The notes below the pieces were generated by a model, which was given only the letters and a program-made list of their open reading frames with translations, ran no database searches and had not been told where the DNA came from. This document shows, in pieces, positions 7,804 through 63,154 of a DNA stretch of 64,000 nt. The stretch lies in the sequence record MK250019.1; one strand, given 5' to 3'. Numbering within the stretch: position 1 is the stretch's first letter; every line of letters starts with the position of its first letter. Both the position numbers and the translations under genes were made by a program.

Positions 7804-8853
7804 ATGAAGAAGTTTATTTTTATGCTTATTGCAATGTTTACATTTGCAATTGGTTCAATTAACGCACAGACACAGAATGACTATGCAGGTTCTAGTAAGT
7901 TTACTGATAATGTTTCAGTAACACTTCAGGGTGGTGTTCTTACATCATTTGATAATTTTTATAGTGGTCATACTGCAATGGCACCTATTGTTTTGATTGG
8001 TGCAGATAAGTATGTAACCCCTTGGTTAGGATTTGGTGTAGAAGGTCGTACACTTATTGGTACAGGTCATGGTAGTTATAATACATATACTGCTTTTGAT
8101 TATGTTAATGTAAGTGGTCTTGCAAAGGTTAATCTTGCTAATGCATTTAAGTTTGATGGAACACGTAAGTTCTTCGAGCCTGTTGTTTATACAGGTCTTG
8201 GTTGGGGACATCAGACAGCAAGTTATGGAGATAATCACAATAACTGGATGACTTATCGTGCAGGTGCAGAGTTTAATTTTAATCTTGGTGAGGATCGTGC
8301 ATGGGGTATTGTTGTAAATCCATCAGTTGTTTGGAATGACATTGACAATGGTAAGCTTGTAAAGAAGAACGGTAGTTTTGAGATTACAGCAGGTGTTGTT
8401 TATCGTTTCAAGAATTCAAATGGAAAGCGTTCATTTGCTAAGGCACATCTTTATGATGCAGCAGAGGTTGCAGCTCTTAACAAGAAGATTAATGAGCTTG
8501 AATCACGTGAACCTGTTGTAATTGAGAAGATTGTAGAGAAGCCTGTTGCAACTAATACTGTTGCAGGTGTTGGTTCAAATGTATTTGTTGCTCCATTTAA
8601 GTTTAATAGTTCAGTACTTTCTGATAAGTGTAAGTCAGTACTTGATAATATTGCAGAGGGCACAACAGTTGTAATTGATGCATATGCATCTTCTGAGCCA
8701 AAGAGTTCTGCAAAGTATAATACAAAGCTTTCTGTAGAGCGTGCAAATGCAGTTAAGAAGTATCTTGAGTCACGTGGCGTTAAGGTAACAGATACCACAG
8801 GACATGGTATGGATGATGATTTTGGTCGTGTTGCTATTGTTACTGTAAAGTAA
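7804..8853 (+). CDS. OmpA-family outer-membrane protein with signal peptide (Bacteroidota Omp40/41-like architecture)
   Basis: N-terminal signal peptide, beta-barrel-like region ending 'AGVVYRF', linker, C-terminal OmpA-like domain 'YNTKLSVERANAVKKYL'. Confidence 0.85.
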   Translation: MKKFIFMLIAMFTFAIGSINAQTQNDYAGSSKFTDNVSVTLQGGVLTSFDNFYSGHTAMAPIVLIGADKYVTPWLGFGVEGRTLIGTGHGSYNTYTAFDYVNVSGLAKVNLANAFKFDGTRKFFEPVVYTGLGWGHQTASYGDNHNNWMTYRAGAEFNFNLGEDRAWGIVVNPSVVWNDIDNGKLVKKNGSFEITAGVVYRFKNSNGKRSFAKAHLYDAAEVAALNKKINELESREPVVIEKIVEKPVATNTVAGVGSNVFVAPFKFNSSVLSDKCKSVLDNIAEGTTVVIDAYASSEPKSSAKYNTKLSVERANAVKKYLESRGVKVTDTTGHGMDDDFGRVAIVTVK

Positions 8854-10790: not shown

Positions 10791-12056
10791 ATGCCTATTA
10801 TTGAGAAAACAAAGTATTCATATAATGATTTGACTATTGAGCCTGCGGTAATTAGTTCAATTAAGAGTAGAAAGGAATGTGATCCATATGAGCGTATGGA
10901 TGTAAATATGAGAGATTATCTTCCGTTGTTTACTGCACCAATGTCTACTATTGCAAATGAACATAATTTTAATATATGGAAGAAGAATAAGATTATGCCT
11001 ATGTTGCCACGAAATATTGGTGCTGATCCAAATGGAAGTATTGATAAACGAATTAGTTATATCAAAGATTTTCTTGATAATGGTGATTGGGTTGCATTGT
11101 CACTTAAGGAATTTGAATATGTTTTTGTAGAACATAAGATGATGAGTCCTGGACAACTCTTTCCTGGTTATAATCGAACATATAGAGTATGTGTAGATTT
11201 GGCTAATGGCCATATGGAATGTCTATATGATACAATTAATAAAGCAAAGGAAATTGCAAGAAATAACAATTATAAACTTATTGTAATGACAGGAAATATT
11301 GCAAATCCTGAAACATATAGATGGATTTGCAAACATGCTGAAGTTGATTATATTAGATTGTCTGTAGGAAGTGGATCAAATTGTATTACGGCTACGCAGA
11401 CCTCTGTTCATTATCCTATTGCATCATTAATTGATGAATGTAAGTATATAAAGAATGTATACGAAGGTAAATCTTATGCTAAATCAACACCTTATATTAT
11501 TGCTGATGGTGGTGTTAGAGGATATGCAGATGTTATTAAGGCTATTGCTCTTGGTGCAGATTATGTAATGATTGGTAGTTTGTTTACAGGATTACTTGAA
11601 TCTGCTGCACCTCTTGATATTGAGTGTTATAATTCACATTATAAGTATGGATATGCAGAAGGTATTATTAATGATGGTATTAATAATATTCTTAATCTTT
11701 GGGATGGTCTTGAAGATGAAGATGATAATGATACATTAGTACCAATTGATAATAAAGAATTGGAGCAGAAGAAGAAAGATTTCATTAAGGATATGAAAGA
11801 TATTGTAAAGGAATCTTATGGTATGTCTACAAAGAAGGCTCAGAAGTTGATTAATCCAAATGCAAAGTCAAAGACTTCTGAAGGATGTACGAAGTATATT
11901 CATGTAAAGGAAACTGTTAAGCAGTGGTCAGATAATATGATAGATTATTTCAGGTCAGCAATGAGTTATACAAATAAGAAATATATTAATGATTTCAGAG
12001 GAAAAGTAGATCTGATTATTAATAGTTCATCTGCAATTCTTGCAGTAAATAAGTAA
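10791..12056 (+). CDS. IMP dehydrogenase / GMP reductase family protein
   Basis: LPLFTAPM, catalytic loop SVGSGSNCIT, IADGG, ALGADYVMIG, SEG, RSAMSY. Confidence 0.9.
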   Translation: MPIIEKTKYSYNDLTIEPAVISSIKSRKECDPYERMDVNMRDYLPLFTAPMSTIANEHNFNIWKKNKIMPMLPRNIGADPNGSIDKRISYIKDFLDNGDWVALSLKEFEYVFVEHKMMSPGQLFPGYNRTYRVCVDLANGHMECLYDTINKAKEIARNNNYKLIVMTGNIANPETYRWICKHAEVDYIRLSVGSGSNCITATQTSVHYPIASLIDECKYIKNVYEGKSYAKSTPYIIADGGVRGYADVIKAIALGADYVMIGSLFTGLLESAAPLDIECYNSHYKYGYAEGIINDGINNILNLWDGLEDEDDNDTLVPIDNKELEQKKKDFIKDMKDIVKESYGMSTKKAQKLINPNAKSKTSEGCTKYIHVKETVKQWSDNMIDYFRSAMSYTNKKYINDFRGKVDLIINSSSAILAVNK

Positions 12057-12152
12057 ATAATTTTATTCATCATTTTAATATTAGGATGAAATACTTAATT
12101 ATGAGTATTTCATCCTTTTTTAATAAATATATAAAAAGAAAAATTACCTAAT

Positions 12153-14342
12153 ATGTCAAAAATAAAGAATTATCAAAAGTTAGATAAAAATTCTGTATTT
12201 AATAATTGTAGTTATGCATAGTCAGCAGGTGTTTATTATAATTAGGAAGGTTTTTCTAATGTAACAAATAAAATTTAGGATATGGGAACATATAATCCTG
12301 ATAAGTATATATTAGGAAATATAACTAAACCAAATAAGAAGACATTTGTTAATTATGATAAACATGAAATAATTAATAAAGGAAATAATACAAAAATTAA
12401 CATTAATAATATAAAGAATAATAAGGAAACATATGCGTATGTTTCTGGTATTATGGTTCCTACTATTGAAGCTGAAGTAAAACCTATTACAGAAATATTA
12501 AAAGAAACTGAAAATAATATTACAAATTCAAAAAATATAGTTATTAATAGTAAAGAATTTAAAGAATTACATAAAGAAGAAAAAGTTATTAATAATAAAG
12601 ACGTTAAACAAGTAAAATGTAAATCATCTGTAAATTTATTTTCTAAAGTATTTGAAAATAAACAATAGAATGATATTAATGATGATAATGTAATATATTT
12701 AAATGGTTGGGTATGGTTAAATAGATTTAATAAACCATATGCACATAATTTTGGTGATGATATAAATTTTTCATTTTTGACAGAAATAACAGGTAAGAAA
12801 CATAAGAAATATGATAATGAATTTGTAACAAATTATTTAATGATTGGAAGTATTTTTATTGATAAGTATATAAATGATTTTACAGAAGTATGGGGTAGTG
12901 GAATGTTAAGACATTAGGTATTATATAAAAAACCAAATAAAGTATATGCAGTTAGAGGTCCAAAAACACGAGAGATCTGTTTAGCATCAAATATAGATTG
13001 TCCGGAAATATATGGAGATCCTGCATTATTAATACCATATTACTATTATCCTTATGTAATGAAAAAATATAAATTAGGAATTATTCCACACCATTCTCAT
13101 ATTAATTCAGATATATTAAATAAATTTAAAGATAATGAAAATATTAAGATTATTAATTTTACAAAATATAATGATTGGAAAGATATAATTAAAGAAATTG
13201 TAGAATGTGAATTTATTATATCTGAAAGTTTACATGGTTTGATTATATCAGAAGCATTTAGAATTCCTAATATATGGATTTCATTAGGAAATAATATAGG
13301 ATAGAATTTGAAATATGAAGATTTCTTTTTATCTATTAATAAACCATTATATGATTCATATTTAGTAAATGAAGATACAACATATGAAGACTTATTAAAA
13401 TTAAAAGATAATTATAATTCAACATTTGAAATAGATTTACAAAAATTAGTTGATGCTTGCCCTATAAAATTAAAGAATTTAAATTTATATAATCAGATTA
13501 AACCATATACAGGAAAAGTATTATTATGCTGTATAGGAAAAATGGAAAATAATTATATACGAGAGTTTGTAGAATATTATAAAACAATAGGATTTGATAA
13601 TATATGTTTATATGATAATAATGATATAGATGGAGAACATTTTGAGGATGTAATAGGTGATTATATAGATTCAGGATTTGTAATATTAAAAAATTGGAGA
13701 GGAAAAGAATTAGCATAGATTCCATCATATACAGATTGTTATAATACATATAAAGATGAATATGATTGGATTGCATATTTTGATATAGATGAATTTTTAG
13801 ATTTAGCTTGTAATAATATAAAAGAATTCTTATCAGATGATATGTATAATGATAGAGGTATAAATTGTATAAGAGTTTGTTGGAAACAATTTACTGATTC
13901 TAATATTATTAAAACAAATGGAAATTATTCAATAACTAAATTTAATCAATATATACCATTAGATAAAGATAAATATTGTGCATAGACAAAAATTATAATT
14001 AAAACGTAGTTAGATAATATCATATTTGATTCACCACATGGTGTTATATATAATAAAGATTGTCATATTACATGTGCAAATACAAATGGTGATTTATGTA
14101 CAAATGATATAATTATAAATAATCCTACATGGGAAAATGCATGTTTAAATCATTATCGTTTTAGAACAATAGAGGAATATGTATTAAATAAAATGGTAAG
14201 ATTATGGCCAACAACATATATGAATGGCGGAAAAATGGGATTAAATTTAAATTTATTTTTCAGATATAATACATTTTCATAGGAAAAATTAGATTATGCA
14301 AATTATCTTTTAGATAAATATAATATAAGTAGAAATGAATAA
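12153..14342 (+). CDS. fused polysaccharide pyruvyltransferase (ExoV-like) and GT92/GT2-like glycosyltransferase (729 aa, code 15)
   Basis: single frame with 10 in-frame TAG and no TAA/TGA; NFGDD, GSI, VWGSG, AVRGPKT, GDPALL, LGIIPH, SESLHGLI; then FDNICLYDNN, WIAYFDIDEF, LNHYRFRTIEEY. Confidence 0.85.
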
Positions 14343-14445
14343 ATGAAAATAAAAGAGCAATTAAATATTTTTATATAGTGCAAAATTATATAGAATATTA
14401 ATTGCTCTTTTTTGATAAATATAAAAAATAACATGTTATATTTAA

Positions 14446-15411
14446 ATGAATAAAGATATACGTCCACCTCAGCATGTATTACATGTTTTCGATCCTAATA
14501 GAAAATGTAGACCACATGATGAAGTTGAGTTTATAGAAGGTCGTTATGTTGATATTGTAAATGCAAAGAATAAGGATCCACATACTTTGTATTTCGGTAA
14601 ATCAAAGAATTCTGAGCTCTTAACAGGTATTTTTTTAGGTGATCTTGAACTTACTTCAAAAGTAAAAGATGTATCTCTTGTTTCTGTTGATGGTGTTGTA
14701 ACATTATCTATTAAATATGTTAATTCTGCTGGTAAACTTGCAACTGTAAAAACAAATTTACCTTCATAGAAACTTGTTGAAGATATTAAAAAATTATTAG
14801 AATCTTTTGATACAAGTATTCTTAATAAAATTAACACATCATTCAGTGATGTATATGATAGATTAAATGTTATCGATTCATCAATAGTTGATATTAATAA
14901 TCATCTTACAGTTATAGATACTTCTGTAGGTGAATTAACAACAAGAGTAGATACATTAGATACATCATTATTAGGATTAATAGATGAACTTGATCATGGT
15001 AAGTATAATTATACAATACATGAAGATCCTGGAACATATGCAAACGGTTTCAAAAAAACATTTACTTTATTTAAAGGTGATGAAGAACAAAAAGATTCAT
15101 CTAAGATTGAAGTAACTGATATGGTGTTGAAATAGTTAAATTATGTTAAAGATAATAATGTAATTGAAGCAAAAGTTTGGCCAGAACCTATTAAGTCAAT
15201 CGATTTAATCGGTGATGTTCTTACATTAAAAGATGGTACAGTTATTAAAGATGTTATTTCATCTCTTGATAAAGATTTAATTAAAACTGTATCATTAGAC
15301 ATGAAAGGTTATGACGAACATATTAATGACTTCATGAATACTGATTCATCTATTAATGACAGATTAACTTTTGTAGAAAACCAATTGAAATGGGAAGAGT
15401 TAGATAAATAA
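14446..15411 (+). CDS. putative virion fibre/structural protein 1 (321 aa, code 15)
   Basis: 2 in-frame TAG; coiled-coil-like D[ST]S repeats; ends LKWEELDK. Confidence 0.7.
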
Positions 15412-15454
15412 AAAAGAGAAAATAAATAATAAAATTAAATCTATTAAATTTAAT

Positions 15455-17029
15455 ATGAATAAAAATATGGTTTATAGTGCTAATGAAGCAACTTCTTTAA
15501 CTGATAAAGTTGCAGATTTTACAAAGGGTAAAAACATTCACTTTGGTTCTGGTGCATTTGAAGAATAGAAAGTTGTTGCTATTGCAACAGCAGCTGAATC
15601 TGATGCAAAGGTTCGTTTCGTATATGATGCAATAGGTGATTCTGGTATGGTATTTGTTGGTAATCAACTTGCATCTTCTAAGATTCTTGACATTACAACA
15701 AATAAAGTAGCAAAGAAACATTTTGATCCTGAAACTGGTAATTATGTAGAATCAACTACAGAAAAAGTTGCAACTAAGGTAACAGTTACATGGTTTGGTT
15801 CTCAGGAAGATCCAAAAGATAATGTTGTAAAGACACAGACATGGACTACTGTATTTGATGTTATTGATACAGATACAGTAAAAGCAATGATTGATAAAGC
15901 TTCAGCAGATTTAAATAAATCAGTTGATGATTTAAAAACAAAGCATGAAGCAGACGTTTTACGTTTAGATACATCAGTTAACGGCATTGAGACACTTCTT
16001 AAGAGCGATGTAGTTTCAGCTGACACGGGTAGTGCACTTACAGTAACTCATACTGCTGCTGATGCAACAGGTTATAAGACTTATAAGGTTGCAGTTAACG
16101 TAGATGATGCAGAAGGTTCAACTATTAAGGTTGTAGATAATAAGATTAAGATTGCAAAGTATGCAATTAAGCAGGTTGCTGCGGATTCTATGGAAAAAGA
16201 TGCAGATACTAATGAAACAAAGTATGCATCTGAATATCAGTTAATGATGACTGATGCTGATGGTGTTACAAAGGCAGTTGGTGATAAGATTAACATTGCA
16301 AAAGACTTCTTAGTAACTAAGGCACATGTATGTACATTTAAGTATGTTGCTGAAAATGGCGCAGAAATTAAGTATGATGTACAACTTGAAGATCAATGGG
16401 GTAATTCTCCAGCAGTTAAATATGGAGATGAAGTAACATCAGAAAATCAGCTTCCATGGTCTAAGAATCAGGATGGTACATGGGAACAAGCACGTCTTGG
16501 TTTCGGTATTAAGTATGGTCATTCATATTTACACTTAGTTATCAATACTAAGCCAACTAATACAAAAGCTGCTAGACTTGATGATGTTTATCTTGATTTT
16601 ACAGAAATCTTTACAACATTCAAGGGTGATGATAAATTCATCAAGGTTGAGAATGGCGTTGTTTCTTTGGATATTGATGCTGTTTCATCTAAAGTTGATG
16701 AAAAACTTAAGGTTAATGATACATTCACAGAACTTAAGGCAAAAGATGAAGCAATTGAAGGTCGTCTTAATGGATTAGATACATCTGTAAGCAATATTGA
16801 GAAATCATATGTAACAGATGCATCTCTTGAAGCGCCAAAGGCAGATAATGCACAGTTCAATACTTTAAAGATTACAAATCATAAAGTTGTTGATGGTGTT
16901 GCAAAAGACACAGAGGTTACTGTAGATGTTGCAAATGAAAAATATTATGCAGGATTAAATACAGCATTAAATACACTTACAGAAAATGATAAACATCTTT
17001 CTGCACTTCTTACATGGGAAGAACTCTAA
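15455..17029 (+). CDS. putative virion fibre/structural protein 2 (524 aa, code 15)
   Basis: ATG 15455 in frame via one TAG; SSKILDITT motif; ends LTWEEL. Confidence 0.75.
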
Positions 17030-17131
17030 TTAATTTTTAATTAACTTTAATAATATAATGGGATAACTGATAATAATTCAATTATCCCATTTTTTAGATA
17101 AATAAAATAAAATATAAACTTTATTAATAAT

Positions 17132-19075
17132 ATGGCTATTACTATTAAAAAGTCAATGATTAATGGTGCTCCAGTTATTTTTGGCGCTCCTGCTGATGCA
17201 GATACTGCAAAAGGTGTAGAAGTAAAATTTGGTTATGGTACACTTGAGAATGTACTTGCAAAAGTTGGTACTGCAGATGACGGCGTAATCTATTTCGGTT
17301 ATGATGATGCTAAATCAACTGGTGCAATTGTTTCACGCGGTAAACTTGTTTCTTCAAAAATTCTTGATATTACAACAACTGCTGCTGTAACAGGAGAAGG
17401 TGGTAAAGTAACAAAAGAAGCATAGATTGTAATTTCTTATATTGATACTGATAAGTCTGTTAAAACATTAGAAATTCCTGTTTCTGCTGATGGTAAATTA
17501 AAAGATCTTGCTGATAAGATTGAAGCTCTTAAAACATTAGTAGGTACAAAGGCAGATACTAAAGATACTGATACAGTATTCGGTGCAATTGCAAAAGAAA
17601 CAGATCGTGCAACTACTAAAGAAACTGCAATTTCCGATCTTCTTGGAACAAAGGATGATGATAAAACAAAAGAAACTGCATTTGGTAAGATTGCTACTGA
17701 AGTAGCGCGTGCAACTGATGCAGAAACAGGATTATCAAATAGAATCAAAACACTTGAAGATAAAAAGTATACAACAGTTAATGCAAAAACAGATGGTCAT
17801 GTAAAAGTTGCTGTTTCTGATGATAATGTTGTAACTGTAACAGAAGATGATATTGCATCTGCTGCACTTCTTGGTACTGTTGATGATGTTGCTGGTACTG
17901 CAACTGCATTTGGAAAGATTGCTAATGAAACAACGCGTGCAACTGATGTTGAAGGTAAGTTAGATACTCGTGTAACTAATATTGAAACACTTATAGGTGA
18001 TGCAGAAAAGCCAGATGAAGATAAAGTAATCAATAAAGTAACTGAAGTAATTGATTGGTTCAAAGGCGTTTCTGAAACCGAAAAAGGTGCAACACTTATT
18101 TCTGATGTTGCTGCTAATAAAACAGCTATTGGTACAAAAACTGTAGAAAATACTAATAGCATTTATAAGAGAATTGAAGATCTTGAAGCAAAGAAACATA
18201 CAAAAAGTGATGTAACTGCTGATGCTGGTAAATGTGTATCAGGTATTCGTGTTGATGAAAATGGTGCATTAACAATTGATCAAGCTGAATTATCTGCTGG
18301 TAATATTAATGCTACTGCAATTGTAGCAGGTGATGATACTGTTGCAGTTGAAGGTGATAAGGTTGCTTCATAGATTGAAAGTTTAGCTAAGTCTATTAAG
18401 ACTGCTACAAAGTCTGCTGATGATGCAATTAAGGCACTTGATGTTACAGATACTGCAGTAGAAGGAAAATATGTTTCTGCTGTTTCTGAAGAAGATGGTA
18501 AGATTACAGTTACACGTGCAGATCTTCCTACACTTTCTGTTAAGACAGGTTCAGAACAATTTGCAGCTGTTAATAACCATGAAGTTGAAATCAAGACTAC
18601 CGCATTAAATACTGTTGGTCTTACAAAGACTGAAGCCGGTAAATGGCAAGCAGGTACTGCTGATGCAAAATCAACTGGTCTTGCAACTGCTGCAGATGTT
18701 GCCGCAGAAATCGTATCAGATGAAGAGGTTATTGCAACAGCTCTTAATGACCATGAAAATCGTTTAAAGACAGTAGAAGGTAAAGAAATTACTGTTTCTT
18801 CTGCTAAGTATGATGTTGCTATTTCTGTTGCAGAAGTAAAAGATAGCGATGTTGTTACTACAGCTGCAACTAATTTCAATGTTACTGGTGGTAAAATTAC
18901 ATTTACTATTCATAATGGTGATAAAGCTGTTGCAGAAACAATTACTGCATATACAGAAGATACTGTTAAATCTCTTGTTGAACTTTATGCAAAGGAAAAA
19001 GCTCGTGCTGAAGCTGCAGAAGCTGATCTTGATAAGAGATTAACTTGGGTTGAATTGAATAAGCAAGACAAATAA
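17132..19075 (+). CDS. putative tail-fibre-like protein 3 (647 aa, code 15)
   Basis: TAG at 17423 and 18371 read through; repeats FGxIAxExxRAT; SSKILDITT; ends LTWVELNKQDK. Confidence 0.75.
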
Positions 19076-19857: not shown

Positions 19858-21513
19858 TTAATCTCTCTTTTTATATATTAAATATGGTGAATAACATTTT
19901 AAATAATCTTCCCTAATATCATCTTTATTACAATTTAGAAATTCTTTTAACATACTTTTATTAAATCTAAATTCACTACGTTTATAATTATAATAATTTA
20001 ATGTAAATTTAATTTTATCTGATTCTAATTTAAAATTTAATGTTTCATATAATTTTATATTATCAGTTTCTAAATTACAATTAACAATAATAGAATTATA
20101 AGTATAATTACATTTAAAATAATTTAATAATAGTTTTTCACAACCTATCACATATAAATTATTTTTATAACAAATTCTATTTAATATATAATTATTATCT
20201 GATATATTACTAAATGTCATACAACATAATAATTCATTATTCTTAAATAATCCTAATTTTATATCAGACTCAATATAATTATCAATATGATAAGTATTTA
20301 TAAAATCTTTACATATATTTTTATCTAATTCTTTAATGATACAATTATCTGAAAATACTTTCTGCTCAAGATGACAACTTCTTAATATAATATTTTCTAT
20401 TTTATCTATATTATAATGAATATCATCTTCCCAAAATGTTAACATCTATATATCAGTTTTAGATACTAAATCATATTTTACTTTAAATCTATTCTTACCA
20501 TTAATTCCGCAATGCCAATAAATTCCATTACATTCTATTGCAACTTTATAATCAGGTAAATAAAAATCAAATTCACGCGGTGATATTATATATCTAACAT
20601 GTTGTTCAAACTTTATATTATGTCTCTCCAATAATAATCTTATTTTATATTCTATAGACGTCTCTAAATTTTTTTCTGGATTACATATAGGACACATAAC
20701 AATATCTTTCTACTATCTATTAAAAAATGTATAATTCTTTATTGAAAATGGATTATGTATTTTACATTGATTATAAATTATAAATTCATTTTTATTATCT
20801 GAATATTTAATTTCATAACCACGTTTTAACCATTTATTTTCTATTGTTTTATGTTTATTAACTAATTTCTATTTAACATTATTTTCATTCTTATTCGCAC
20901 ATTCATTAGAACAATAATGTCTAAACCCTTCACTGAATCTATAAAACTTAACATATTTTCCACATGTAGGGCATACAGGACTTTTATTAATATGATTCTT
21001 CATTCGATATAAAATCTCCTGTATAACTGATTTATTCCTCTATAAATCATCATACCTATTCATCATGTAATCATATATACCAAATTGCTTTAACTTTTTA
21101 TTTTTACAATATTCAGATATTAATCTGTCATCTTTAATCATTAAATTCAATACATATTCATCATCAATATTTTCTTTCTACTTTACATCAGTTAATTTAT
21201 GTATTTTATTCGGATCATTTAATGAACATTTATATGAACAATATTGATTATAACCATATAAAAATCCTCTGAATAATAAAGGAATCTCTTTACCACATGT
21301 TTTACAATATAAATGTAAATCATCTGGTAATTTATAATATATCCTATATATGATTTCCTGTATATTTTTTACAGATTTAAATCTATTCATTAAATAATCA
21401 TATAAACCATGATCTTTTAACCATGATTCTTTTATTCTACATGTATTTAATTGAATTTTATTGTGTCTAAATACTGTTAATTTATCTATTATAATCTGAT
21501 CTGTTACTTCCAT
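19858..21513 (-). CDS. free-standing zinc-finger plus PD-(D/E)xK (Vsr/DUF559-like, Hef-like) putative homing endonuclease (551 aa, code 15)
   Basis: three track ORFs joined through 6 TAG in one frame; two CxxC...YCSxxC repeats; EFDFYLPDYKVAIECNGIYWH nuclease motif. Confidence 0.75.
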
Positions 21514-21609
21514 ATTTTTTATATTAATAAATGTTAAAAATGTTTTAATAAACAAATAACATATTTTACTATATAATTTAAAATTTGAATTAGAATTTAA
21601 TTGAAAAAC

Positions 21610-22422
21610 ATGGAAGAAAAGAAATATAAATTTTGTCAGATAGATCCAAATAATTGCACTGTTGAAGAACTTGAAGAAGAAGTAGAAAGACTTAAAAACT
21701 TAGGTGATTTTTACGAGACTAAACAGTTGGCACTTAAGAAATTTATTAATAGTGTTTACGGAGCAACCGCGAGCAAGTATTTCATTGCACATAACACAGC
21801 TGTTGCGGAATCTATTACACTTCAGGGACAGGATTTGAATCATTATTCAGAGAATTCTGTTAATGCATATTTTAGTGGTATATTTCAGAATGATACTGAA
21901 TTGCATAAGAAATTGGGTATTGATTCGGAAAAAGCAAAAAAAGTAAGTATTGCCAAGGGTAAAACAACAGAAACAGGTACGTTAGATGGACCCGAGTTTT
22001 CATATCTTGACGGAAACCAATCATTAACCGTGGCTGGTGATACTGACTCAACTAGCTGGAAATCAAGCATTTACGTTGATTCGGTTAAACTAAAGGTTCA
22101 AGATGCATTTAATAAATTTAAATATGAAAATAATGATACTGTATTAAAATTAAATAATGGTCAAGAAATTGTTCCAGTTCATAATCATAATATTTTATCA
22201 TATGTTGATCATGATGCTGAAGCTACATATAGACCGATAAAATATATTATGCGTCATAAAGTATATAATAAATCAAGGTTCAGAATTAAATCTAAATCAG
22301 GTAAAGAATTAGAAGTTACTGGTGATCATAGTATGATGATAATTCGTAATAATGAACTAATTACTGTTAAAGCAAAAGATATTTTAAAAACCGATAAAAT
22401 TATTACAATCGCAGGAGATTAA
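21610..22422 (+). CDS. polB: family B DNA polymerase middle fragment (motif B to GDTD) fused to N-intein
   Basis: KQLALKKFINSVYG (motif B), ITLQGQ, AGDTD, then Ser-initiated intein block A and TGDH block B; TAA stop. Confidence 0.9.
   Translation: MEEKKYKFCQIDPNNCTVEELEEEVERLKNLGDFYETKQLALKKFINSVYGATASKYFIAHNTAVAESITLQGQDLNHYSENSVNAYFSGIFQNDTELHKKLGIDSEKAKKVSIAKGKTTETGTLDGPEFSYLDGNQSLTVAGDTDSTSWKSSIYVDSVKLKVQDAFNKFKYENNDTVLKLNNGQEIVPVHNHNILSYVDHDAEATYRPIKYIMRHKVYNKSRFRIKSKSGKELEVTGDHSMMIIRNNELITVKAKDILKTDKIITIAGD
22048..22419 (+). mobile_element. split intein N-half (124 aa)
   Basis: begins with S right after GDTD; HINT-like 'KELEVTGDHSMMIIRN'. Confidence 0.85.
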
Positions 22423-26976: not shown

Positions 26977-27438
26977 ATGATGGAATCTGTTATTGCAATC
27001 AGTGTAGGTTTCTTTATTATGATGTGTATTATTATAAAGTTTATAGTAATTAATAATATTCATGATATTCCTGATATTGTAGATAATACAGATGATGATA
27101 TTTAGAATACCTTGAAATAGGATGTTCAATATAAGAGTGTATAGGATGTTGATAGCATAGATGATATATCTATTAATAGTATTGATGTAAATATTGATAT
27201 TGATATTATTAACCATGATTTAACATTTAATAATAATGATGATGAGACATCTGATGATGATATACAATAGTTAATGCTTTTAATAGAACCTATAGAAGAT
27301 AATATTAAACAAGTTTCTGAGAATAATAGCAATATATTCTCAGAAACTTCTCGTATATTAAATTTTAGTGCAAAACATGAAAAAGAAATAGATTTATCTG
27401 GTACTACTTTAATTTCATTAAGATCTATTAAACAATAA
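26977..27438 (+). CDS. acidic membrane-anchored protein (153 aa, code 15; absent from track)
   Basis: ATG 26977 to TAA 27438 with 4 in-frame TAG; N-terminal TM, Asp-rich body. Confidence 0.6.
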
Positions 27439-27487
27439 TAGTAATTTTTTGTATAATATTTAAATGAAAATCTAATTGAAATTAAAT

Positions 27488-28036
27488 ATGAGTTATACTT
27501 ATAATGAAACACGTACAGATATGCCTGTATATGATGAAGGTACTCGTACGAGAGAAGATAAGGATATTATCTTTGTAACAACTTAGTCTGATACGGTAAA
27601 AACAGATATTGAAGAAGATGAACCTTGTGGTGATCCTGTAGATAAATCTTTTAATGTACCTATTAAAGAAAATAAGCTTTAGCCACTAAAACCTAATAAG
27701 ATTGTATTTAAGGAACAAGCTTAGATTTCTCACAAGAAAGAAGCAAATCCTATTTTTAATACAGATAATTTAAATGTGGTTGAACATCCAAATCATTATG
27801 GCGCAGGAAACGGAGGTTTGCAATGTATTGAAGCAATGCTTTAGACTTTCGGTAAAAATGCAACAATGGATTTTTGTAAATTGAATGCATTTAAATATAT
27901 TTGGAGATCTGATCATAAAGATAAGGAAGTTCAGGATATGGAGAAAGCAAAGAGATACCTTGAGTATTGGCATGTACTTGCAAAACTTAGTGGTAATTCA
28001 GATGATGGTTCATTCCATGCATATCTTAATAATTAA
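27488..28036 (+). CDS. DUF3310 (T7 gp1.7 nucleotide-kinase-like) domain protein (182 aa, code 15; absent from track)
   Basis: 4 in-frame TAG; VEHPNHY..CIEAM..FCKLNAFKYIWR..QDMEKAKRYL. Confidence 0.8.
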
Positions 28037-50234: not shown

Positions 50235-53200
50235 ATGAAGGTAACAAAACGTGATGGTAGTTTTGAGAATTATAGTGTTTAGACAGTTAAACGTGCAGTT
50301 AGAGAAGCGTTTAAGTCAACAAAGACTAAATACTCAAAAGACACAATTTCGAATATTGTAAGTTCTATTACGCCATATGATGGCATTCCTGTAGAAGAAA
50401 TACAGGATCAGATAGAAACAAGTTTGTATTCTCATGATCAGCCTAAAGTTGCAAAAGAATTTATTCTTTATCGCAATAAGAAGAAGGAAATCAGAGAATG
50501 GGTTGCTAATAAAGAAGCATTTATTGAAAGATATAAAAATGCATCAAATACTGCAAATAGTACAATTGATGATAATTCTAACGTATCATCTAAGAACATC
50601 GGTGTATTAAATGCAGAAATTCATAAAGGTGATAATATTCTTGTAAGTAGAGGAATGATTACAAGAAAATTAAAAGATTTATTCCCTGATTTTAAAGCAA
50701 AACAATATCAAAAAGATTTAAAAAATCATATTATCTATAAGAATGATGAATCAAGTTTTGCTGGTGCTATAAGTCCTTATTGTGTTAGTGTATCTATGTA
50801 TCCATTTCTTAATCATGGATTGGAAAAGATTGGAGGATTGTCATGTCATCCACAAAATCTTGATTCCTATTGTGGTATGTATGTAAATCTTGTATTTGCA
50901 GTTGCAGCACAATTTGCAGGAGCAGTAGCAACATCAGAATTCTTGGTATATTTTGATTATTTTGCACGAAAGGAATTTGGAGATGATTACTATTTGCATA
51001 GTAAAGAATTCTATAAGATTGGTCCAAAATATCGTAAGTTACTTAATGAATCTAATTACTGGTGTAAAGATGTAGATACACTTAGAAAACATGATTTTGG
51101 TACAGATGAATTAAATAAATTGAGAGATGAACTTGTTTATAATTCGGAACGACCATTATCTGATGAAGAACTTAAAGAATATGAAACAGAACTTTCTAAA
51201 TATGATGTAGAAGGTTCAATAAAAGATTTTACAAATCCTATTAAGATTGGTGATGGTACAAGAACTATTGGTTCATGTATACAACAATTCTTCCAACAAG
51301 TAGTGTGAATTGAACGCACCCCTAATCGGTGACGATTAGGTAAACTCCATGTGAATTGCAGGGACTCTAAAATAATGAAGAAAATAATTTAATATTTTGA
51401 TTAAAAATATATACAACTTATTATAAATATTAAAATAATAGTATATATTACATGAAAATTACAGATAATAATATAGATGAAATAAAACATATGTATATTG
51501 ATGAACATCGTTCATATCAAGAAATTGCTGATTATTATAATGCAACAATATCATAGGTTAAAAATTTTTTATAGTCTAGATAGATAAAACGAAGATTTGC
51601 GCAAAGTAAATTAAATCAAGAATAGTTTGATAAAATTAAAGATTTATATTTAGGTGATAAAAAATATCCTGTATCTAAAATTTCAAAAATGTTAAATATA
51701 AAAGAATCAATAATAAGAAATTATATATTTGATAATAAATTAACAAGAAAAGAAACAGGAGATGAACGACGTTTAACAATACCATATGAAACACTATATG
51801 ATTTATATATAATTAAAAAGTTAGATAAAAATGAAATTTAGGAAAAATTAAATATATGTCGACAAACTTTAAATAAAAATTTAAAATTTTATAAATTAAC
51901 CAATAAGTATTCAAATTATACAGATAATGATATTTGTAAAATGTATAAAGATGAATATAAAAGTTTATCAGATATAAATAATATTACAAATTTTCCTAAA
52001 TCACGAATAAGATAGATTTTAATAAAAAATAATATATAGTTACGAGATTATCGTTTAAGTTAGATGACAAAAAGTAAAGCATATTTTGAGTATGATATGA
52101 GTTTATTAAATAAGCAATCTTTATTAAAGCGTAATTGCTATAGTTATTTTAAATCTCATATATCAACACAAATAAAGAAAGAACGAAATATGTGTGAATG
52201 TTGCGGTTCAACAGAAAATTTACATTGTCATCATATTAAACCATATTCATTAATTGTTAATGAGATTATAAAAGAAAATAAAAATTTATCTGATACTGAA
52301 TTATATAATGTAATTACTCATGATTCTAGATTTTTAGATACAAATAATATTAAAGTTGTATGTGAAAAATGTCATTATACGATATTTCATTCATACCTTC
52401 ATTATCAAGGGAATCGTGCAGCCAAGCCTAATAATTAGGAAGGTTCAACGACTATCGAAAACATAGAATAAACAAATAAGAGTTTATTTGAAGAAGTGAG
52501 TAGAGTACATAACAAGTGTTATGGAAGTGCATGGCAACTTAATCTAATCAATTAAGTTGGAGAAATAGTCTAAACGAATTTTTAATTCCCTCTATTACTG
52601 AAATGTAATAGTTGTCTATAGAAATATAGAGCAGTTATAAACTGAATATAAATTAACGATTTATATTTAATATATTTGATTCAATTAACCAACCCGCAGC
52701 AAGTCGTGGTCTGCAATCTGCATTTGTAAATTTCTCTTATTTTGATAAGCCTTTCTTTGAAGGTATGTTTGGGGAATTTGTATTTCCAGATGAAGAAGGT
52801 ACAAGACCTTGTTGGGAAAGTGTTTCATGGTTGCAGAAAGATTTTATGATTTGGTTTAATAAAGAGCGCCTTCGTACTATAATCACTTTCCCTGTTGAAA
52901 GTTTTGCATTGGTATATAAGGATGGAAAGTTTGTAGATGAAGATTCTGCAGATTTTGTTGCAGAAGAATATTCTCGTGGTCATTCATTCTTTACTTATAT
53001 GTCAGATACTGTTGATTCATTATCAAGCTGCTGTTTCGATGGTGATACACCATTTATGTTTGTAGAACCTCTTAATATGGAAGAGCATGGTGGTAATAAT
53101 GCATATATGGTTTCAACTATTAAAGATGCATATGAAAAATATAAAGATGATATAATTAATGTATATCATATGAATTTTAATGGTACTACAGGTAAATGTA

Positions 53201-55791: not shown

Positions 55792-55815
55792 GTTTTTATA
55801 ACCTATTTTATTTTT

Positions 55816-55858
55816 AATAAGTTATAACATATACTTTATGTTATAACTTATTTTTATT
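55816..55858 (+). terminator. intrinsic terminator after nrdD
   Basis: aataagttataacata...tatgttataacttatt plus T-run. Confidence 0.75.
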
Positions 55859-55922
55859 TAATAGTATTAAAGGTTTATCCTATTATTCAATTAGATAAAT
55901 ATTATAAATGAAAATATAATAT

Positions 55923-56984
55923 ATGAATTATAATAAAATTTATAATAATATTATTAATAATGCAAAAAATCGAAATAATATAAACAATCAATACTTTGAA
56001 ATACATCATATTATCCCTAAATGTATAGGAGGAACTGATGATGATAAAAATTTAGTAAAACTTACATTACGTGAACATTTTATATGTCATGAATTATTAG
56101 TTAAAATATATCCAGATATACAATCATTAAAATGCGCATTATGGATTATTTGTATTACGACATTAGAAGCAAAAAAAGAATATATAACAAATAATATAAA
56201 ATATAAAAATAATAAATTACCTATTAATCATAGAGTACAACATTTTTTAAATGATTTTGAAAAACATATTAATATATCTTCAAGAGATTATGAATATTGT
56301 AGAACATTATATTATATAGCAACAAAAGGGAAAAAACGAACTGTTGAGCAATGTAAAAAAATTTCAGATGCGACAAAGCATGCTATGAAAGATCCATCTA
56401 GAGTACAATTAAGAAGAAAAGGTGTATTGGGTAGTAAATTTTATTATGATTTAATAACAAATAAATCTTATAAATGGTTTCCGGGAGATCCAGATATTGA
56501 TTTAAATAAGTATGCGTGGGGTAGAGGAAAGAAAATGAGTTTAAAATCAAAAACATTAATGTCTGAAAATTTATCAAAATATAAAAAAGTATATTATTAT
56601 AATGATAATTTAAAATCATCTACATGCTTTTGTAAAGATTAGATAAAAATATTACCTGATAGTTGGCATTTAGGAAGAAAATTCGGCGGATATAATAAAA
56701 TGAAAATATTTATTATACCATTATTAAGAAATGTACATTTTAAATTAGTATGTAATTAGCATTTTATTGATAATATATTTTATCATATTAATTTATTAAA
56801 CAAATAGGAAATAAGTATAGGTATATTAACGATTAATGAAAAAATATTAAGTGACTTAATACAAAAAAATATTGATATTAATGATGAAAAATATATTACA
56901 ATAATATATAACAATATATTAAATAATATAAACCAAATTAAAACTATTAATAATAGCGTTTATTTAAATAGTGAAAATATTTAA
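55923..56984 (+). CDS. free-standing HNH homing endonuclease (353 aa, code 15)
   Basis: NYNKIY..FEIHHIIPKCIGGTDDDKNLVKLTLREHF; 3 in-frame TAG; ends VYLNSENI. Confidence 0.85.
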
Positions 56985-59005: not shown

Positions 59006-59047
59006 AAATAGGAGAATAGTTTTTCGTATACTATTCTCCTATTTTTT
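59006..59047. terminator. bidirectional terminator between convergent blocks
   Basis: aaataggagaatagt...actattctcctattt stem. Confidence 0.8.
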
Positions 59048-62000: not shown

Positions 62001-62087
62001 TGTGTCAGTATAATAATAATGTGTTATAGTTTTATCTGATGATACTTCTCCTTTTTTTAAATATTTAATACCATTTATCGTTAACAT
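59046..62087 (-). CDS. baseplate-hub-like protein with C-terminal peptidase M15-like domain (1013 aa, code 15)
   Basis: five track ORFs share one frame with 18 TAG and no TAA/TGA; 'SGWYIIDG...VKLVRREWPVP' hub-type ending; SRHLYGEAIDI...HYHIG zinc motif. Confidence 0.7.
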
Positions 62088-62089
62088 AA

Positions 62090-63148: not shown

Positions 63149-63154
63149 AAATCA

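What the first reader, a model, noticed from the sequence alone, without database searches (positions are those of the whole stretch)
12153..14342. Hidden 729-aa pyruvyltransferase-glycosyltransferase fusion next to fibre genes
Seen: invisible as a unit in code 11 (10 TAG). It has an N-terminal ~170-aa low-complexity region, an ExoV-like polysaccharide pyruvyltransferase and a GT92/GT2-like domain, and lies immediately upstream of three fibre-like genes with the late-type motif. A second GT-like gene lies at 29711. Inference: a late-expressed enzyme that builds a pyruvylated glycan on virion proteins or alters host surface glycans. I do not know of a described equivalent fusion in phages.
Basis: partly seen in the sequence, partly recalled or inferred. 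Interest (0 to 1): 0.68.

Follow-up and report, generated by a model that had tools for sequence, protein, structure and literature searches.

The report
Lak megaphage modular glycan-decorating enzyme gene
This is a real, conserved gene of the Prevotella megaphage Lak-A2 that joins a sugar-adding domain to a pyruvate-adding domain behind a phage-specific front module; the two-domain protein was already published, but related phages swap its enzyme part for sugar-phosphate transferases, which was not found in the papers read.

Summary
The window is Prevotella phage Lak-A2 (100% identity). Lak phages are published users of code 15, TAG=Gln.

**What holds.** The ORF 12153-14342 is real: 729 aa, 10 in-frame TAG, ending in TAA. 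It is intact in Lak-A1, C1, B2 and B8 at about 70% aa identity between the A and B lineages. It carries PS_pyruv_trans and a GT92-like GT-A domain, both above Pfam cut-offs. The best fold match is the GT92 galactan synthase GalS1.

**What is already known.** Crisci et al. 2021 list this two-domain protein as a Lak core family.

**What appears to be new.**
- Residues 1-125 are not filler. They form a Lak-only module under purifying selection, dN/dS 0.17.
- In otherwise syntenic Lak genomes the catalytic part is replaced by Stealth sugar-phosphate transferase domains. The left breakpoint is always at codon ~172.
- Other huge phages carry the same two domains in reverse order.

**Expression context.** The gene is its own transcription unit. 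It opens a four-gene island that uses TAG and carries an ATAAATA motif.

**Open or unsupported.** The target, phage particle proteins or host envelope glycan, is unresolved. The "fibre" neighbours are unverified, and the second GT at 29711 is unsupported.

The parts
12083..12122 (+). Intrinsic-terminator-like hairpin plus T-run that closes the upstream IMPDH/GMP-reductase-like gene
   Evidence: 15-bp stem found by the terminator scan. RNA fold -19.2 kcal/mol, z -6.2, matched by 0 of 200 shuffles.
12123..12129 (+). ATAAATA late-promoter-like motif, 30 nt before the start codon
   Evidence: The same motif lies at -28 to -34 before seven genes of the window, and all seven contain TAG codons. Only 16 of the other 63 genes do (Fisher p 2e-4). 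That it is a late promoter is inferred by analogy with the T4 late promoter TATAAATA (own knowledge).
12153..14342 (+). Whole coding sequence: 729 aa plus TAA, with 10 TAG read as Gln
   Evidence: Intact single ORF in Lak-A1, C1, B2 and B8. GC 0.213; 10 of its 17 Gln codons are TAG.
12153..12527 (+). N module, aa 1-125: Lak-specific conserved region of unknown fold
   Evidence: dN/dS 0.17 for A2 against B8 and B2. Found only in Lak-type proteins, both in the word search (17 clusters) and in the exhaustive HMMER search of 1.84 billion representatives (9 hits). AlphaFold pLDDT is below 50. One copy per Lak genome.
12528..12683 (+). Variable Lys/Asn-rich linker, aa 126-177. The recurrent left recombination breakpoint lies at 12669.
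   Evidence: dN/dS 0.56-0.70; 37-46% identity between lineages. DNA similarity to the Stealth-bearing Lak loci L012, L107 and L007 ends at 12669 in all three.
12684..13487 (+). Polysaccharide pyruvyltransferase domain, aa 178-445
   Evidence: PF04230 at 54.2 bits against a cut-off of 25.3. pLDDT above 90. GT-B-like fold matches at Z about 11. Motifs conserved in 24 diverged relatives: NxGD 199-202 (N199 and G201 in at least 90%), R268 in VRGPxTR, D289 in GDP, and S359-L-H361-G.
13488..14339 (+). GT92-like GT-A glycosyltransferase domain, aa 446-729. It has a hypervariable stretch at aa 591-660.
   Evidence: PF01697 at 53.7 bits against a cut-off of 23. Best fold match is the GalS1 GT92 galactan synthase: Foldseek E 3e-7; Z 15.7 and 14.2 against 12.8 or less for other GT-A enzymes. 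The profile aligns to the GalS1 DxD region. D544, D546 and H667 are invariant. aa 591-660 is 43-57% identical between lineages.
12670..14407 (+). Exchangeable catalytic cassette, replaced by Stealth domains in other Lak genomes
   Evidence: Locus L012 is 97% identical up to 12669, shows no similarity over 12670-14407, and is 90% identical from 14408. In L107 the right breakpoint is 14279, leaving a 64-nt remnant of the GT92 gene end. In L007 only 12670-13479, the pyruvyltransferase part, is replaced.
14351..14413 (+). Terminator-like hairpin plus T-run after the gene
   Evidence: RNA fold -22.6 kcal/mol, z -5.9, matched by 0 of 200 shuffles.
14415..14421 (+). ATAAATA motif of the next gene, at -31
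14446..19075 (+). Three downstream genes (321, 524 and 647 aa) that share the ATAAATA motif and use TAG. With the fusion they form a four-gene island between TAG-free genes.
   Evidence: TAG counts are 2, 1 and 2; the flanking genes at 10791 and 19178 have none. The synteny is kept in all Lak loci, including the distant L111. The 524- and 647-aa proteins are paralogous over their first ~160 aa (30% identity, E 7e-7). No family hit passes threshold. A structural role is not shown.

Best explanation
The gene encodes a late-expressed, soluble, bifunctional glycan-decorating enzyme made of three parts.

1. The GT92-like GT-A domain (DxD plus His metal site) transfers one hexose from a host-made nucleotide sugar to an acceptor. 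Galactose is likely by analogy with GT92 enzymes.
2. The fused pyruvyltransferase domain then uses phosphoenolpyruvate to put a pyruvate ketal on that sugar. The product is an anionic cap.
3. The Lak-specific N module (aa 1-125) does no chemistry. It holds the catalytic cassette on a partner that stays constant in Lak biology. The most likely partners are the products of the three co-regulated late genes next door, or another particle component. On that reading the decoration ends up on phage particle proteins.

The catalytic cassette is exchangeable. Other Lak genomes carry one or two Stealth (hexose-1-phosphate transferase) domains behind the same N module, which would install a different anionic sugar group.

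Shown: the gene, its domains, the catalytic motifs, conservation, cassette exchange, and the transcription-unit layout.
Inferred: the sugar identity, the order of the two reactions, late timing, the role of the N module, and above all the target.

The confidence given (0.4) is for the whole statement including the particle target. For the chemistry alone it is about 0.8.
For: Enzymology:
- Both Pfam domains score above their cut-offs.
- The GT domain is closest in fold to the GalS1 GT92 enzyme, and its DxD/His residues are invariant.
- The pyruvyltransferase motifs are conserved over 24 diverged relatives.

Functional coupling of the two domains: they are fused in both orders in many independent huge phages.

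One-step decoration rather than a pathway: Lak-A1 and B8 have no GT2, GT1/GT4, Stealth or NAD-epimerase family hits, and only one GT92 domain.

N module as a phage-bound tether:
- dN/dS 0.17, lower than for the enzyme domains.
- Restricted to Lak.
- It stays with the phage backbone while the cassette behind it is swapped at codon ~172. This holds even in a lineage where the module is only 39% identical.

Late timing and link to the neighbours:
- The gene has its own terminator-promoter unit.
- The ATAAATA motif is shared with the next three genes and tied to TAG use.
- TAG marks late structural and lysis modules that are scattered over Lak genomes.
- Core-gene status in at least 49 of 51 Lak genomes fits a role in the particle better than a sporadic host-conversion gene.

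Precedents: glycosylated mycobacteriophage capsid and tail tube (cited), and the 4,6-pyruvylated GlcNAc polysaccharide on Mimivirus fibrils.

Presence in RNA libraries: contigs from three metatranscriptomic studies cover most of the gene, and a fourth touches only a short part. This shows presence only.
Against: - No direct evidence identifies the acceptor.
- The neighbours are not shown to be virion proteins. There is no family hit above threshold, no PDB relative, and the AlphaFold model of the 524-aa protein is unusable (pLDDT 44.7).
- The cellular relatives of both domains sit in envelope-polysaccharide loci of Bacteroidales: ABC transporter, GT2 and TagF-like genes. Their native acceptors are therefore lipid-linked or polymeric glycans, not proteins.
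- GT92 enzymes are known to extend glycans, not to start protein glycosylation (own knowledge), and the phage encodes no other detected GT to make a primer.
- The hypervariable stretch aa 591-660 and the lineage mosaicism would also fit adaptation to variable host glycans.
- The N module is predicted disordered. Its tether role is pure inference.
- The position equivalent to Pvg1 Arg337 appears to be Ser359. This is judged by motif position only, not by an alignment.
Confidence: 0.4

Rival explanations
1. Host-envelope remodelling. The enzyme has the same chemistry but works at the inner face of the host membrane on Prevotella capsule, O-antigen or teichoic-acid-like intermediates. It adds a pyruvylated side sugar, or a sugar-phosphate in the Stealth variants. 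This changes the cell surface and either blocks superinfecting phages or stops progeny from sticking to infected cells and debris.
For: - The closest cellular relatives of both domains are stand-alone genes in Bacteroidales surface-polysaccharide loci, at 45% identity or less.
- Crisci et al. note that the best similarity is to Prevotella.
- Jumbo phages are proposed to modify capsule or LPS against rival phages.
- Cassette polymorphism, mosaicism and the hypervariable putative acceptor region fit an arms race over variable host glycans.
- Other phages carry the domain pair inside small glycan gene clusters: ATP-grasp TupA, DUF1919 and an extra GT2 domain.
Against: - The late-type promoter motif and heavy TAG use are a poor fit for superinfection exclusion, which should start early.
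- A core gene kept at over 90% identity in more than 1200 sequences from many animals is odd for an enzyme that must match highly variable host glycans.
- The Lak-only N module travels with the phage backbone, not with the cassette.
- There is no membrane segment, flippase or Gtr-type partner in the gene or beside it.
Confidence: 0.3
2. Packaged and injected effector. The N module is a capsid-targeting or propeptide-like signal. The enzyme is made late, loaded into the head or tail, and delivered with the DNA. It then edits host glycans at the very start of the next infection, in the way T4 Alt is delivered.
For: - It reconciles late expression with a host-directed activity.
- The front module is constant, disordered and phage-specific, and the payload is exchangeable.
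- A conserved P-T/I-I-E stretch near aa 103-106 loosely resembles head-protease cleavage motifs of T4 and phiKZ-type phages (own knowledge).
Against: The case is entirely circumstantial. There are no proteomic data, the motif match is loose, and no similarity to any known targeting sequence was found.
Confidence: 0.1
3. DNA hypermodification. The glycosyltransferase decorates modified bases of phage DNA, and the pyruvyl group is added on top.
For: - Neighbouring genes concern nucleotides and replication: IMPDH/GMP-reductase-like, HD phosphohydrolase and PolB.
- Viral GTs that put diverse glycans on DNA are known (cited).
Against: - The only thymidylate-synthase-family gene found in Lak-A1 and B8 matches the family profile strongly (E 4e-87) and gives no sign of a hydroxymethylase.
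- Late-type regulation and TAG load do not fit an enzyme needed during replication.
- The relatives of both domains are polysaccharide enzymes.
- No pyruvylated DNA is known (own knowledge).
Confidence: 0.03
4. Decaying or functionless passenger: a recently captured bacterial gene with no role.
For: It has low GC (0.213) and high TAG use, like the homing-endonuclease genes of the window.
Against: - It is intact in all lineages with dN/dS 0.17-0.38 in the N module and both enzyme domains.
- The catalytic motifs are invariant.
- It is a core gene.
Confidence: 0.02

Closest known systems
Lak-core 'pyruvyltransferase-like protein [K13665]' of Crisci et al. 2021 (iScience, PMC8346664)
   Same: This is the same gene family. 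[quoted passage not shown]
   Different: In the main text, the paper mentions the protein only in that passage and gives no function. It contains no mention of Stealth or glycosyl. Its supplementary files held as text have no hit for pyruvyl, K13665 or Stealth. The N module, the cassette variants and the reversed-order relatives shown here were therefore not found there.
Bacterial polysaccharide pyruvyltransferases (PF04230: ExoV, GumL, WcaK, CsaB, WcfO types) and yeast Pvg1
   Same: The Pfam family match is above its cut-off. The NxGD, Arg and Ser-Leu-His-Gly motifs are conserved. The fold is GT-B-like. PEP-binding Arg and His residues are described for Pvg1.
   Different: - The domain is fused to a GT92-like domain and a phage-specific N module.
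- Identity to Bacteroidaceae homologues is 45% or less, and those are stand-alone or sit in other fusions.
- The residue before Leu-His is Ser, not the Arg reported for Pvg1.
- No sequence-level hit to any solved structure was found.
GT92 glycosyltransferases (plant galactan synthase GalS1, PDB 8d3t/8d3z)
   Same: GalS1 is the best fold match (Z 15.7 and 14.2; Foldseek E 3e-7). The DxD region aligns at sequence level. The Pfam match is above its cut-off.
   Different: Identity is only 13-15%. The enzyme is prokaryotic-viral, soluble, and has no stem or membrane anchor. Donor and acceptor are unknown.
Virus-made particle glycans: Mimivirus fibril polysaccharide with 4,6-pyruvylated GlcNAc; glycosylated mycobacteriophage capsid and tail tube
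   Same: In both, virus-encoded enzymes of bacterial type decorate particle proteins, and the Mimivirus glycan carries a pyruvate ketal.
   Different: Those viruses encode whole pathways or several GTs, and the products have been measured. Lak has one GT domain and one pyruvyltransferase domain, and no product is known.
Phage serotype-conversion and jumbo-phage capsule/LPS-modification genes
   Same: These are phage-borne glycan-modifying enzymes related to host surface-polysaccharide genes, and they are polymorphic between related phages.
   Different: Known systems are typically temperate-phage, membrane-bound (Gtr, Oac) or multi-gene clusters, and sporadic. This one is a single soluble core gene with late-type regulation.
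Modular phage tail fibres and tailspikes (constant N-terminal anchor, exchangeable C-terminal receptor-binding or depolymerase domain)
   Same: The evolutionary pattern is the same: a conserved front module stays with the phage backbone, and the distal functional domains are exchanged by recombination at a fixed junction.
   Different: The exchanged domains here are biosynthetic transferases that need cytoplasmic donors, not binding or degrading domains. Attachment of the protein to the particle is not shown.

Membership tests
Polysaccharide pyruvyltransferase (Pfam PF04230) | Match to the family profile above the curated cut-off | tested here: met
   54.2 bits against a cut-off of 25.3, E 2.6e-14. 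The best stretch is aa 246-378 on profile positions 99-278 of 280. Homologues carry the same precomputed domain.
Polysaccharide pyruvyltransferase (Pfam PF04230) | Two-lobed Rossmann-like (GT-B-like) fold, as in Pvg1 and CsaB | tested here: inconclusive
   The domain is modelled at pLDDT above 90. It aligns to GT-B-type UDP-GlcNAc 2-epimerase (Z 11.2, aa 175-439) and to 6x1l (Z 10.9). No solved pyruvyltransferase appeared in the lists, and the domain was not folded and searched on its own.
Polysaccharide pyruvyltransferase (Pfam PF04230) | Conserved PEP-pocket residues (Arg, Asp and Leu-His, as described for Pvg1: R217, D240, R337-L338-H339) | tested here: inconclusive
   R268, D289, S359 and H361 are invariant in 24 diverged relatives, and L360 is nearly so. 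Their correspondence to the Pvg1 residues is judged by motif and spacing only. The Arg337 position would be Ser.
Polysaccharide pyruvyltransferase (Pfam PF04230) | PEP-dependent transfer of pyruvate to a sugar | not testable with these tools
   This needs an enzyme assay.
Glycosyltransferase family 92 (Pfam PF01697 / CAZy GT92) | Match to the family profile above the curated cut-off | tested here: met
   53.7 bits against a cut-off of 23, E 3e-14, aa 459-619. PF13704 also matches at 41.3 bits against 27.5.
Glycosyltransferase family 92 (Pfam PF01697 / CAZy GT92) | GT-A fold closest to a solved GT92 enzyme | tested here: met
   GalS1 (8d3t/8d3z) ranks first in Foldseek at E 3e-7. It also ranks first in VIA-align at Z 15.7 and 14.2, with 207-210 residues aligned, against 12.8 or less for other GT-A enzymes.
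Glycosyltransferase family 92 (Pfam PF01697 / CAZy GT92) | DxD motif and distal His for the metal-nucleotide sugar | tested here: met
   D544-I-D546 aligns with the GalS1 D-V-D region. D544, D546 and H667 are invariant in 24 sequences.
Glycosyltransferase family 92 (Pfam PF01697 / CAZy GT92) | Beta-1,4-galactosyl transfer to a glycan acceptor | not testable with these tools
   Donor and acceptor cannot be read from the sequence.
Code-15 (TAG=Gln) late gene module of Lak phages | In-frame TAG at positions where relatives have Gln, in a genome with published recoding | tested here: met
   literature.
Phage tail fibre proteins (claimed for the three downstream genes) | Significant match to a fibre or tail family, or a fibre fold | tested here: not met
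   - Only weak hits were found: two PHROG tail families at E 0.004-0.008 for the 321-aa protein, and Baculo_PEP_C below its cut-off.
- The 524-aa protein has 601 relatives; none of the 120 listed carries a Pfam domain or a name.
- There are no PDB relatives.
- The model has pLDDT 44.7, with long helices and beta stretches, so it cannot be searched.
Glycosyltransferase (claimed for the gene at 29711) | Any family or profile match | tested here: not met
   No Pfam or PHROG hit at E of 0.1 / 0.01 or better. No match to profiles of the fusion or to any fetched protein.
Serotype-converting Gtr/Oac-type phage systems | Membrane-embedded transferase with flippase partners | tested here: not met
   The gene and its neighbours show no Gtr, flippase or other membrane-protein family hit. 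No GT2 family gene was found in Lak-A1 or B8.

The most novel reading that the evidence does not exclude
Lak megaphages carry a plug-in glycan-editing system. A phage-specific N-terminal docking or packaging module holds an exchangeable enzyme cassette on the phage particle or on its fibrous late proteins. The cassette is either GT92 plus pyruvyltransferase, or one or two Stealth sugar-phosphate transferases. Different Lak strains would then display, or deliver, different anionic sugar groups. This would be the first pyruvylated or phosphoglycosylated bacteriophage particle, and a biosynthetic counterpart of tail-fibre domain swapping.
Probability: 0.3. Interest if true: 0.75.

Novelty: new variant of a known kind. 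Interest (0 to 1): 0.45.

Why it matters
Lak phages are the largest gut phages known. They are uncultured, and almost none of their Lak-specific core genes has a proposed role.

This gene is one of the three annotated Lak-specific core families. Because its parts are recognisable enzymes, its product is directly testable by assay and by mass spectrometry.

The cassette exchange behind a constant module marks the locus as a site of ongoing selection at the phage-host or phage-animal interface. If the target is the particle, Lak would extend virus-made pyruvylated glycans from giant eukaryotic viruses to bacteriophages. If the target is the Prevotella envelope, a lytic megaphage would be rewriting the surface of a dominant gut bacterium.

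Either result bears on phage host range, on competition between phages and on immune recognition in the gut.

Tried and rejected
- **Frameshift or assembly artefact:** rejected. The ORF is intact in five Lak genomes and in many assemblies.
- **PHROGs and NCBIfam:** no PHROG family and no NCBIfam family above its cut-off for the fusion.
- **Sequence search of PDB** with the pyruvyltransferase domain, alone and as a profile: nothing real.
- **Fusion in bacteria:**
  - Not found in 20 genome loci with GT92-like genes within 6 kb.
  - Five of those genomes, searched whole, matched only the GT92 half.
  - Not found in the flanks of the ten best of 23 pyruvyltransferase matches among 401 Bacteroidaceae genomes.
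  - This means "not found in those searched", not "absent".
- **Gene neighbours of the fusion in other phages** (L005, L009, L011): they share no genes with the window, and their PHROG hits are families of unknown function.
- **Structure of the 524-aa neighbour:** too poor to search.
- **Protein atlas:** They were not sent to any other outside tool afterwards.
- **Complex prediction:** not used. Its stated input rule is code-11 proteins, and the pair of interest (N module with the 321-aa neighbour) exists here only as code-15 translations.
- **Foldseek against viral models:** not available when asked.
- **Composite pattern of T-run plus ATAAATA:** not enriched over shuffles on its own (5 matches against 3.2 expected). 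Only its fixed distance to start codons and its link with TAG use are significant.
- **Sigma-70-like sites:** not enriched.
- **RNA-library contigs:** they show presence only, not transcription, level or ends.
- **Supplements of Crisci et al.:** no further annotation.
Full report
**Identity of the window and the code**

The stretch 10791-19075 is 100% identical to Prevotella phage Lak-A2 (MK250019.1, 541 kb). It is 98-99% identical to Lak-A1 and Lak-C1, and about 76% to Lak-B1 to B9. No whole genome is held for the window.

Lak phages are published users of code 15 (TAG=Gln), with a tRNA-CTA and RF2. They use TAG mainly in regions that encode structural proteins. Borges et al. describe several alternatively coded late modules scattered over Lak genomes.

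The window shows the recoding itself.
- Counting TAG as sense raises coverage by ORFs of at least 150 codons from 0.62 to 0.83.
- In the target gene, TAG aligns with CAA/CAG Gln in five columns of the Lak orthologue alignment.
- Codon 522 falls on a Gln that is invariant in 24 diverged homologues, including standard-code ones.

**The observation**

The ORF runs from 12153 to 14342: 729 codons plus TAA, with ten in-frame stops, all TAG. An in-frame TAA shortly upstream fixes the first ATG as the earliest possible start.

A single ORF of 728-735 aa with 10-15 TAG sits at the same place in Lak-A1, C1, B2 and B8, at about 70% aa identity between the A and B lineages. The 90%-identity cluster of its closest listed relative has 1226 members. 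A frameshift or assembly artefact is therefore excluded.

**Domains**

Pfam gives PS_pyruv_trans (54.2 bits, cut-off 25.3), Glyco_transf_92 (53.7, cut-off 23) and Glyco_tranf_2_4 (41.3, cut-off 27.5). PHROGs gives nothing, and NCBIfam gives nothing above its cut-offs.

An AlphaFold model built on 34 homologues behaves differently in three regions:
- aa 178-445: pLDDT above 90.
- aa 455-729: mostly 60-95.
- aa 1-177: below 50.

For the GT domain, the best solved-structure match is the GT92 galactan synthase GalS1. Foldseek gives E 3e-7. VIA-align gives Z 15.7 and 14.2, against 12.8 or less for other GT-A enzymes. The family profile aligns to the GalS1 D-x-D region. D544, D546 and H667 are invariant across 24 diverged sequences.

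The pyruvyltransferase domain aligns with GT-B-type folds at Z about 11. It keeps NxGD (199-202), R268 in VRGPxTR, D289 in GDP, and S359-L-H361-G in 24 relatives, some of which their sources name pyruvyltransferase. A review lists R217, D240, R337, L338 and H339 as the PEP pocket of yeast Pvg1. The Lak residues match that pattern in order and spacing, except that the Arg337 position would be Ser. No solved pyruvyltransferase could be aligned by sequence, so this correspondence is only indicative.

**The N-terminal region is a module, not filler**

Residues 1-125 are Asn/Lys/Ile-rich. They are nevertheless well conserved between the A and B lineages, with dN/dS 0.17. That is lower than for the pyruvyltransferase domain (0.20-0.32) and the GT domain (0.31-0.38). 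Residues 126-177 are a relaxed linker, dN/dS 0.56-0.70.

The module occurs once per Lak genome. A word search restricted to it found 17 protein clusters, all Lak-type. An exhaustive HMMER search of 1.84 billion representatives found nine proteins. All are Lak-type proteins or fragments of them, and the most distant is 39% identical. The operators' condition for that costly search applied, because the claim rests on absence of relatives.

**Cassette exchange**

This is the main result beyond the literature read. Three alternative architectures sit behind the same N module:

| Architecture | Example | Size | Notes |
|---|---|---|---|
| Stealth | P0079 | 640-641 aa | cluster of 76 members; one member lies on a 538-kb Lak contig |
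| Double Stealth | P0080 / P0264 | 929 / 908 aa | P0264 comes from a distant lineage |
| Stealth plus GT92 | P0037 | 939 aa | in a Lak-B-like backbone |

All of them lie in the same slot: IMPDH-like gene upstream, and the 321-aa gene followed by genes of about 520 and 600-650 aa downstream.

At DNA level the breakpoints are these:
- L012 and L107 are 97% identical to the window up to 12669 (codon ~172).
- L012 resumes at 14408, in the intergenic hairpin.
- L107 resumes at 14279, so it keeps a 64-nt remnant of the GT92 gene end.
- L007 resumes at 13480, the start of the GT92 domain, so only the pyruvyltransferase part is replaced.

The Stealth cassettes of L107 (A-type backbone) and L007 (B-type backbone) are 90% identical, although their backbones are about 75% identical. 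This indicates recent lateral movement of the cassette.

Among variants that carry pyruvyltransferase and GT92, identity to Lak-A2 jumps between segments:
- P0007: 97% in the N module, but 76-87% and 43-84% in the enzyme domains.
- P0008: 63-74% in the N module, but 93% in aa 241-445.
- aa 591-660 of the GT domain is hypervariable, 43-57% between lineages.

Stealth proteins are hexose-1-phosphate transferases. Both cassette types would therefore install an anionic sugar group. That common theme is my inference.

**Distribution outside Lak**

- Proteins of about 600-680 aa with the same domain order but a different short N-terminus are 55-66% identical to the fusion. The one locus fetched for this class, L011, is TAG-recoded.
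- About 30 clusters carry the two domains in the reverse order, GT92 then pyruvyltransferase, at 41-55% identity per domain. Some have an added GT2 or Stealth domain. They lie on contigs of up to 393 kb, several of which have phage gene content or are IMG/VR viral contigs.
- GT92-like genes alone, often in tandem, occur on 50 IMG/VR contigs.
- In Bacteroidales genomes the two domains were found only apart.
  - The GT92-like genes are stand-alone at 44% identity or less. One example is the three tandem copies in Xylanibacter ruminicola D31d. They sit in an ABC-transporter polysaccharide locus with GT2, TagF-like and cytidylyltransferase genes.
  - The pyruvyltransferase domain was found in 23 of 401 Bacteroidaceae genomes at 45% identity or less, stand-alone or in other fusions. 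The one such gene whose flanks were scanned (L099) lies between GT2 genes.
  - This is "not found in those searched", not proof of absence.

**Regulation and neighbourhood**

The gene is bracketed by strong hairpin plus T-run terminators, with z -6.2 and -5.9. An ATAAATA motif lies 30 nt before its ATG.

The same motif at -28 to -34 precedes seven genes of the window:
- the fusion;
- the next three genes;
- three homing-endonuclease genes near nrdD.

All seven contain TAG, whereas only 16 of the other 63 genes do (Fisher p 2e-4).

The fusion has GC 0.213, and 10 of its 17 Gln codons are TAG. With the genes at 14446, 15455 and 17132 it forms a four-gene TAG-using island. That island lies between TAG-free genes for an IMPDH/GMP-reductase-like enzyme and an HD phosphohydrolase.

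Late expression is an inference. It rests on the likeness of the motif to the T4 late promoter (own knowledge) and on the published link between TAG use and late genes.

Contigs from three metatranscriptomic studies cover most of the gene, and a fourth touches only a short part. Such contigs show presence only.

**The "fibre" neighbours**

- The 524- and 647-aa proteins are paralogous over their first ~160 residues.
- All three end in a Leu-(Thr/Lys)-Trp-(Glu/Val)-Glu-Leu motif and have coiled-coil-like stretches.
- They have higher GC than the fusion.
- No family hit passes a threshold.
- The 601 relatives of the 524-aa protein found include none, among the 120 listed, with a Pfam domain or a name.
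- There is no PDB relative.
- The model is unusable.

A fibrous structural role is plausible but unverified.

The gene at 29711 has no detectable relation to any glycosyltransferase.

Lak-A1 and B8 show no GT2, GT1/GT4, Stealth or NAD-epimerase family genes, and only one GT92 domain. The phage cannot build a glycan on its own. It can only add a decorated sugar to something that already exists.

**Mechanism**

I am fairly confident, at about 0.8, of the chemistry: a metal-dependent GT-A domain adds a hexose and the fused pyruvyltransferase caps it with a pyruvate ketal from PEP. The recurrent fusion of the two domains in both orders supports their coupling.

The target is open.

I rank decoration of phage particle proteins first, at about 0.4. 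The arguments are these:
- late-type regulation;
- co-location and co-regulation with three conserved late genes;
- core-gene status;
- an N module that follows the phage backbone.

Precedents are glycosylated mycobacteriophage particles and the pyruvylated Mimivirus fibril polysaccharide.

Remodelling of the host envelope is close behind, at about 0.3. It is supported by the polysaccharide-locus context of the cellular relatives, by the arms-race look of the locus, and by the jumbo-phage capsule-modification idea.

A late-made, packaged and injected effector (about 0.1) would reconcile the two. DNA glycosylation and a functionless passenger are unlikely.

**Novelty**

The two-domain protein is published as a Lak-core family, so the headline finding is not new. 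In the papers I could read, I did not find the following: the selected Lak-only N module, the exchange of the catalytic cassette for Stealth domains at a fixed junction, the lateral movement of that cassette between lineages, and the reversed-order fusions in other huge phages.

I therefore rate it a new variant of a known kind, namely virus-borne glycan-modifying enzymes, with moderate interest.

**Limits**

- The runs of N in the window, first at about 4587 and last at about 34462, lie outside the region and were left untouched.

Noticed in passing
window 19858-22422; compare locus L107 13481-13923: A 565-aa HNH homing-endonuclease gene lies on the minus strand, with 6 TAG and GC 0.194. It sits between the HD phosphohydrolase gene and a family-B DNA polymerase fragment that carries an intein. 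The endonuclease gene is missing at this place in the 538-kb Lak genome behind L107, so it is a presence/absence polymorphism.
   Followed up: partly
window 50235-56984: The anaerobic ribonucleotide reductase (NrdD) region is interrupted. An ATP-cone/NrdD fragment (50235) is followed by HNH, GIY-YIG and HNH endonuclease genes (51452, 53815, 55923) and an intein-containing ORF (52765). The three endonuclease genes are TAG-rich, have GC of about 0.20, and carry the ATAAATA motif at -28 to -32.
   Followed up: partly
window, seven sites 28-34 nt before the ATGs at 12153, 14446, 15455, 17132, 51452, 53815 and 55923: The ATAAATA motif at a fixed distance from start codons is tied to genes that use TAG (Fisher p 2e-4). 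It is a candidate Lak late promoter element resembling the T4 late promoter.
   Followed up: partly
window 59046-63973, minus strand: This TAG-rich module has 18, 4 and 3 TAG codons in its three genes. It contains a 1013-aa protein without family hits, a protein with a phage tail lysozyme domain (PF18013), and a 272-aa protein. It is probably a structural or tail module.
   Followed up: partly
window 7804-8853: A 349-aa protein with a C-terminal OmpA-family (peptidoglycan-binding) domain has unusually high GC (0.369) for this genome. It is conserved at the same place in other Lak loci.
   Followed up: no
window 10791-12056: An IMPDH/GMP-reductase-like dehydrogenase (phrog_9582, 1e-49; 0 TAG) lies directly upstream of the fusion in every Lak locus seen. 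This includes the distant L111, where the called gene is shorter (280 aa).
   Followed up: partly
locus L107 7886-7996: After the Stealth gene, a 36-aa ORF overlaps a 64-nt remnant of the 3' end of the GT92 gene. This suggests that the Stealth-only form arose by replacement or deletion within an older gene that had a GT92 domain.
   Followed up: partly
window 26977-28036: Two small genes with 4 TAG each sit in an otherwise TAG-poor stretch. One of them carries DUF3310.
   Followed up: no
locus L011 9871-13925: In another TAG-recoded phage, the pyruvyltransferase-GT92 gene is followed by a separate 303-aa Stealth gene and two LRR_5 (BspA-like) repeat proteins.
   Followed up: no
window, first at about 4587 and last at about 34462: The window holds 102 N in all (assembly gaps or masked stretches). 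They are outside the finding and were left as they are.
   Followed up: no
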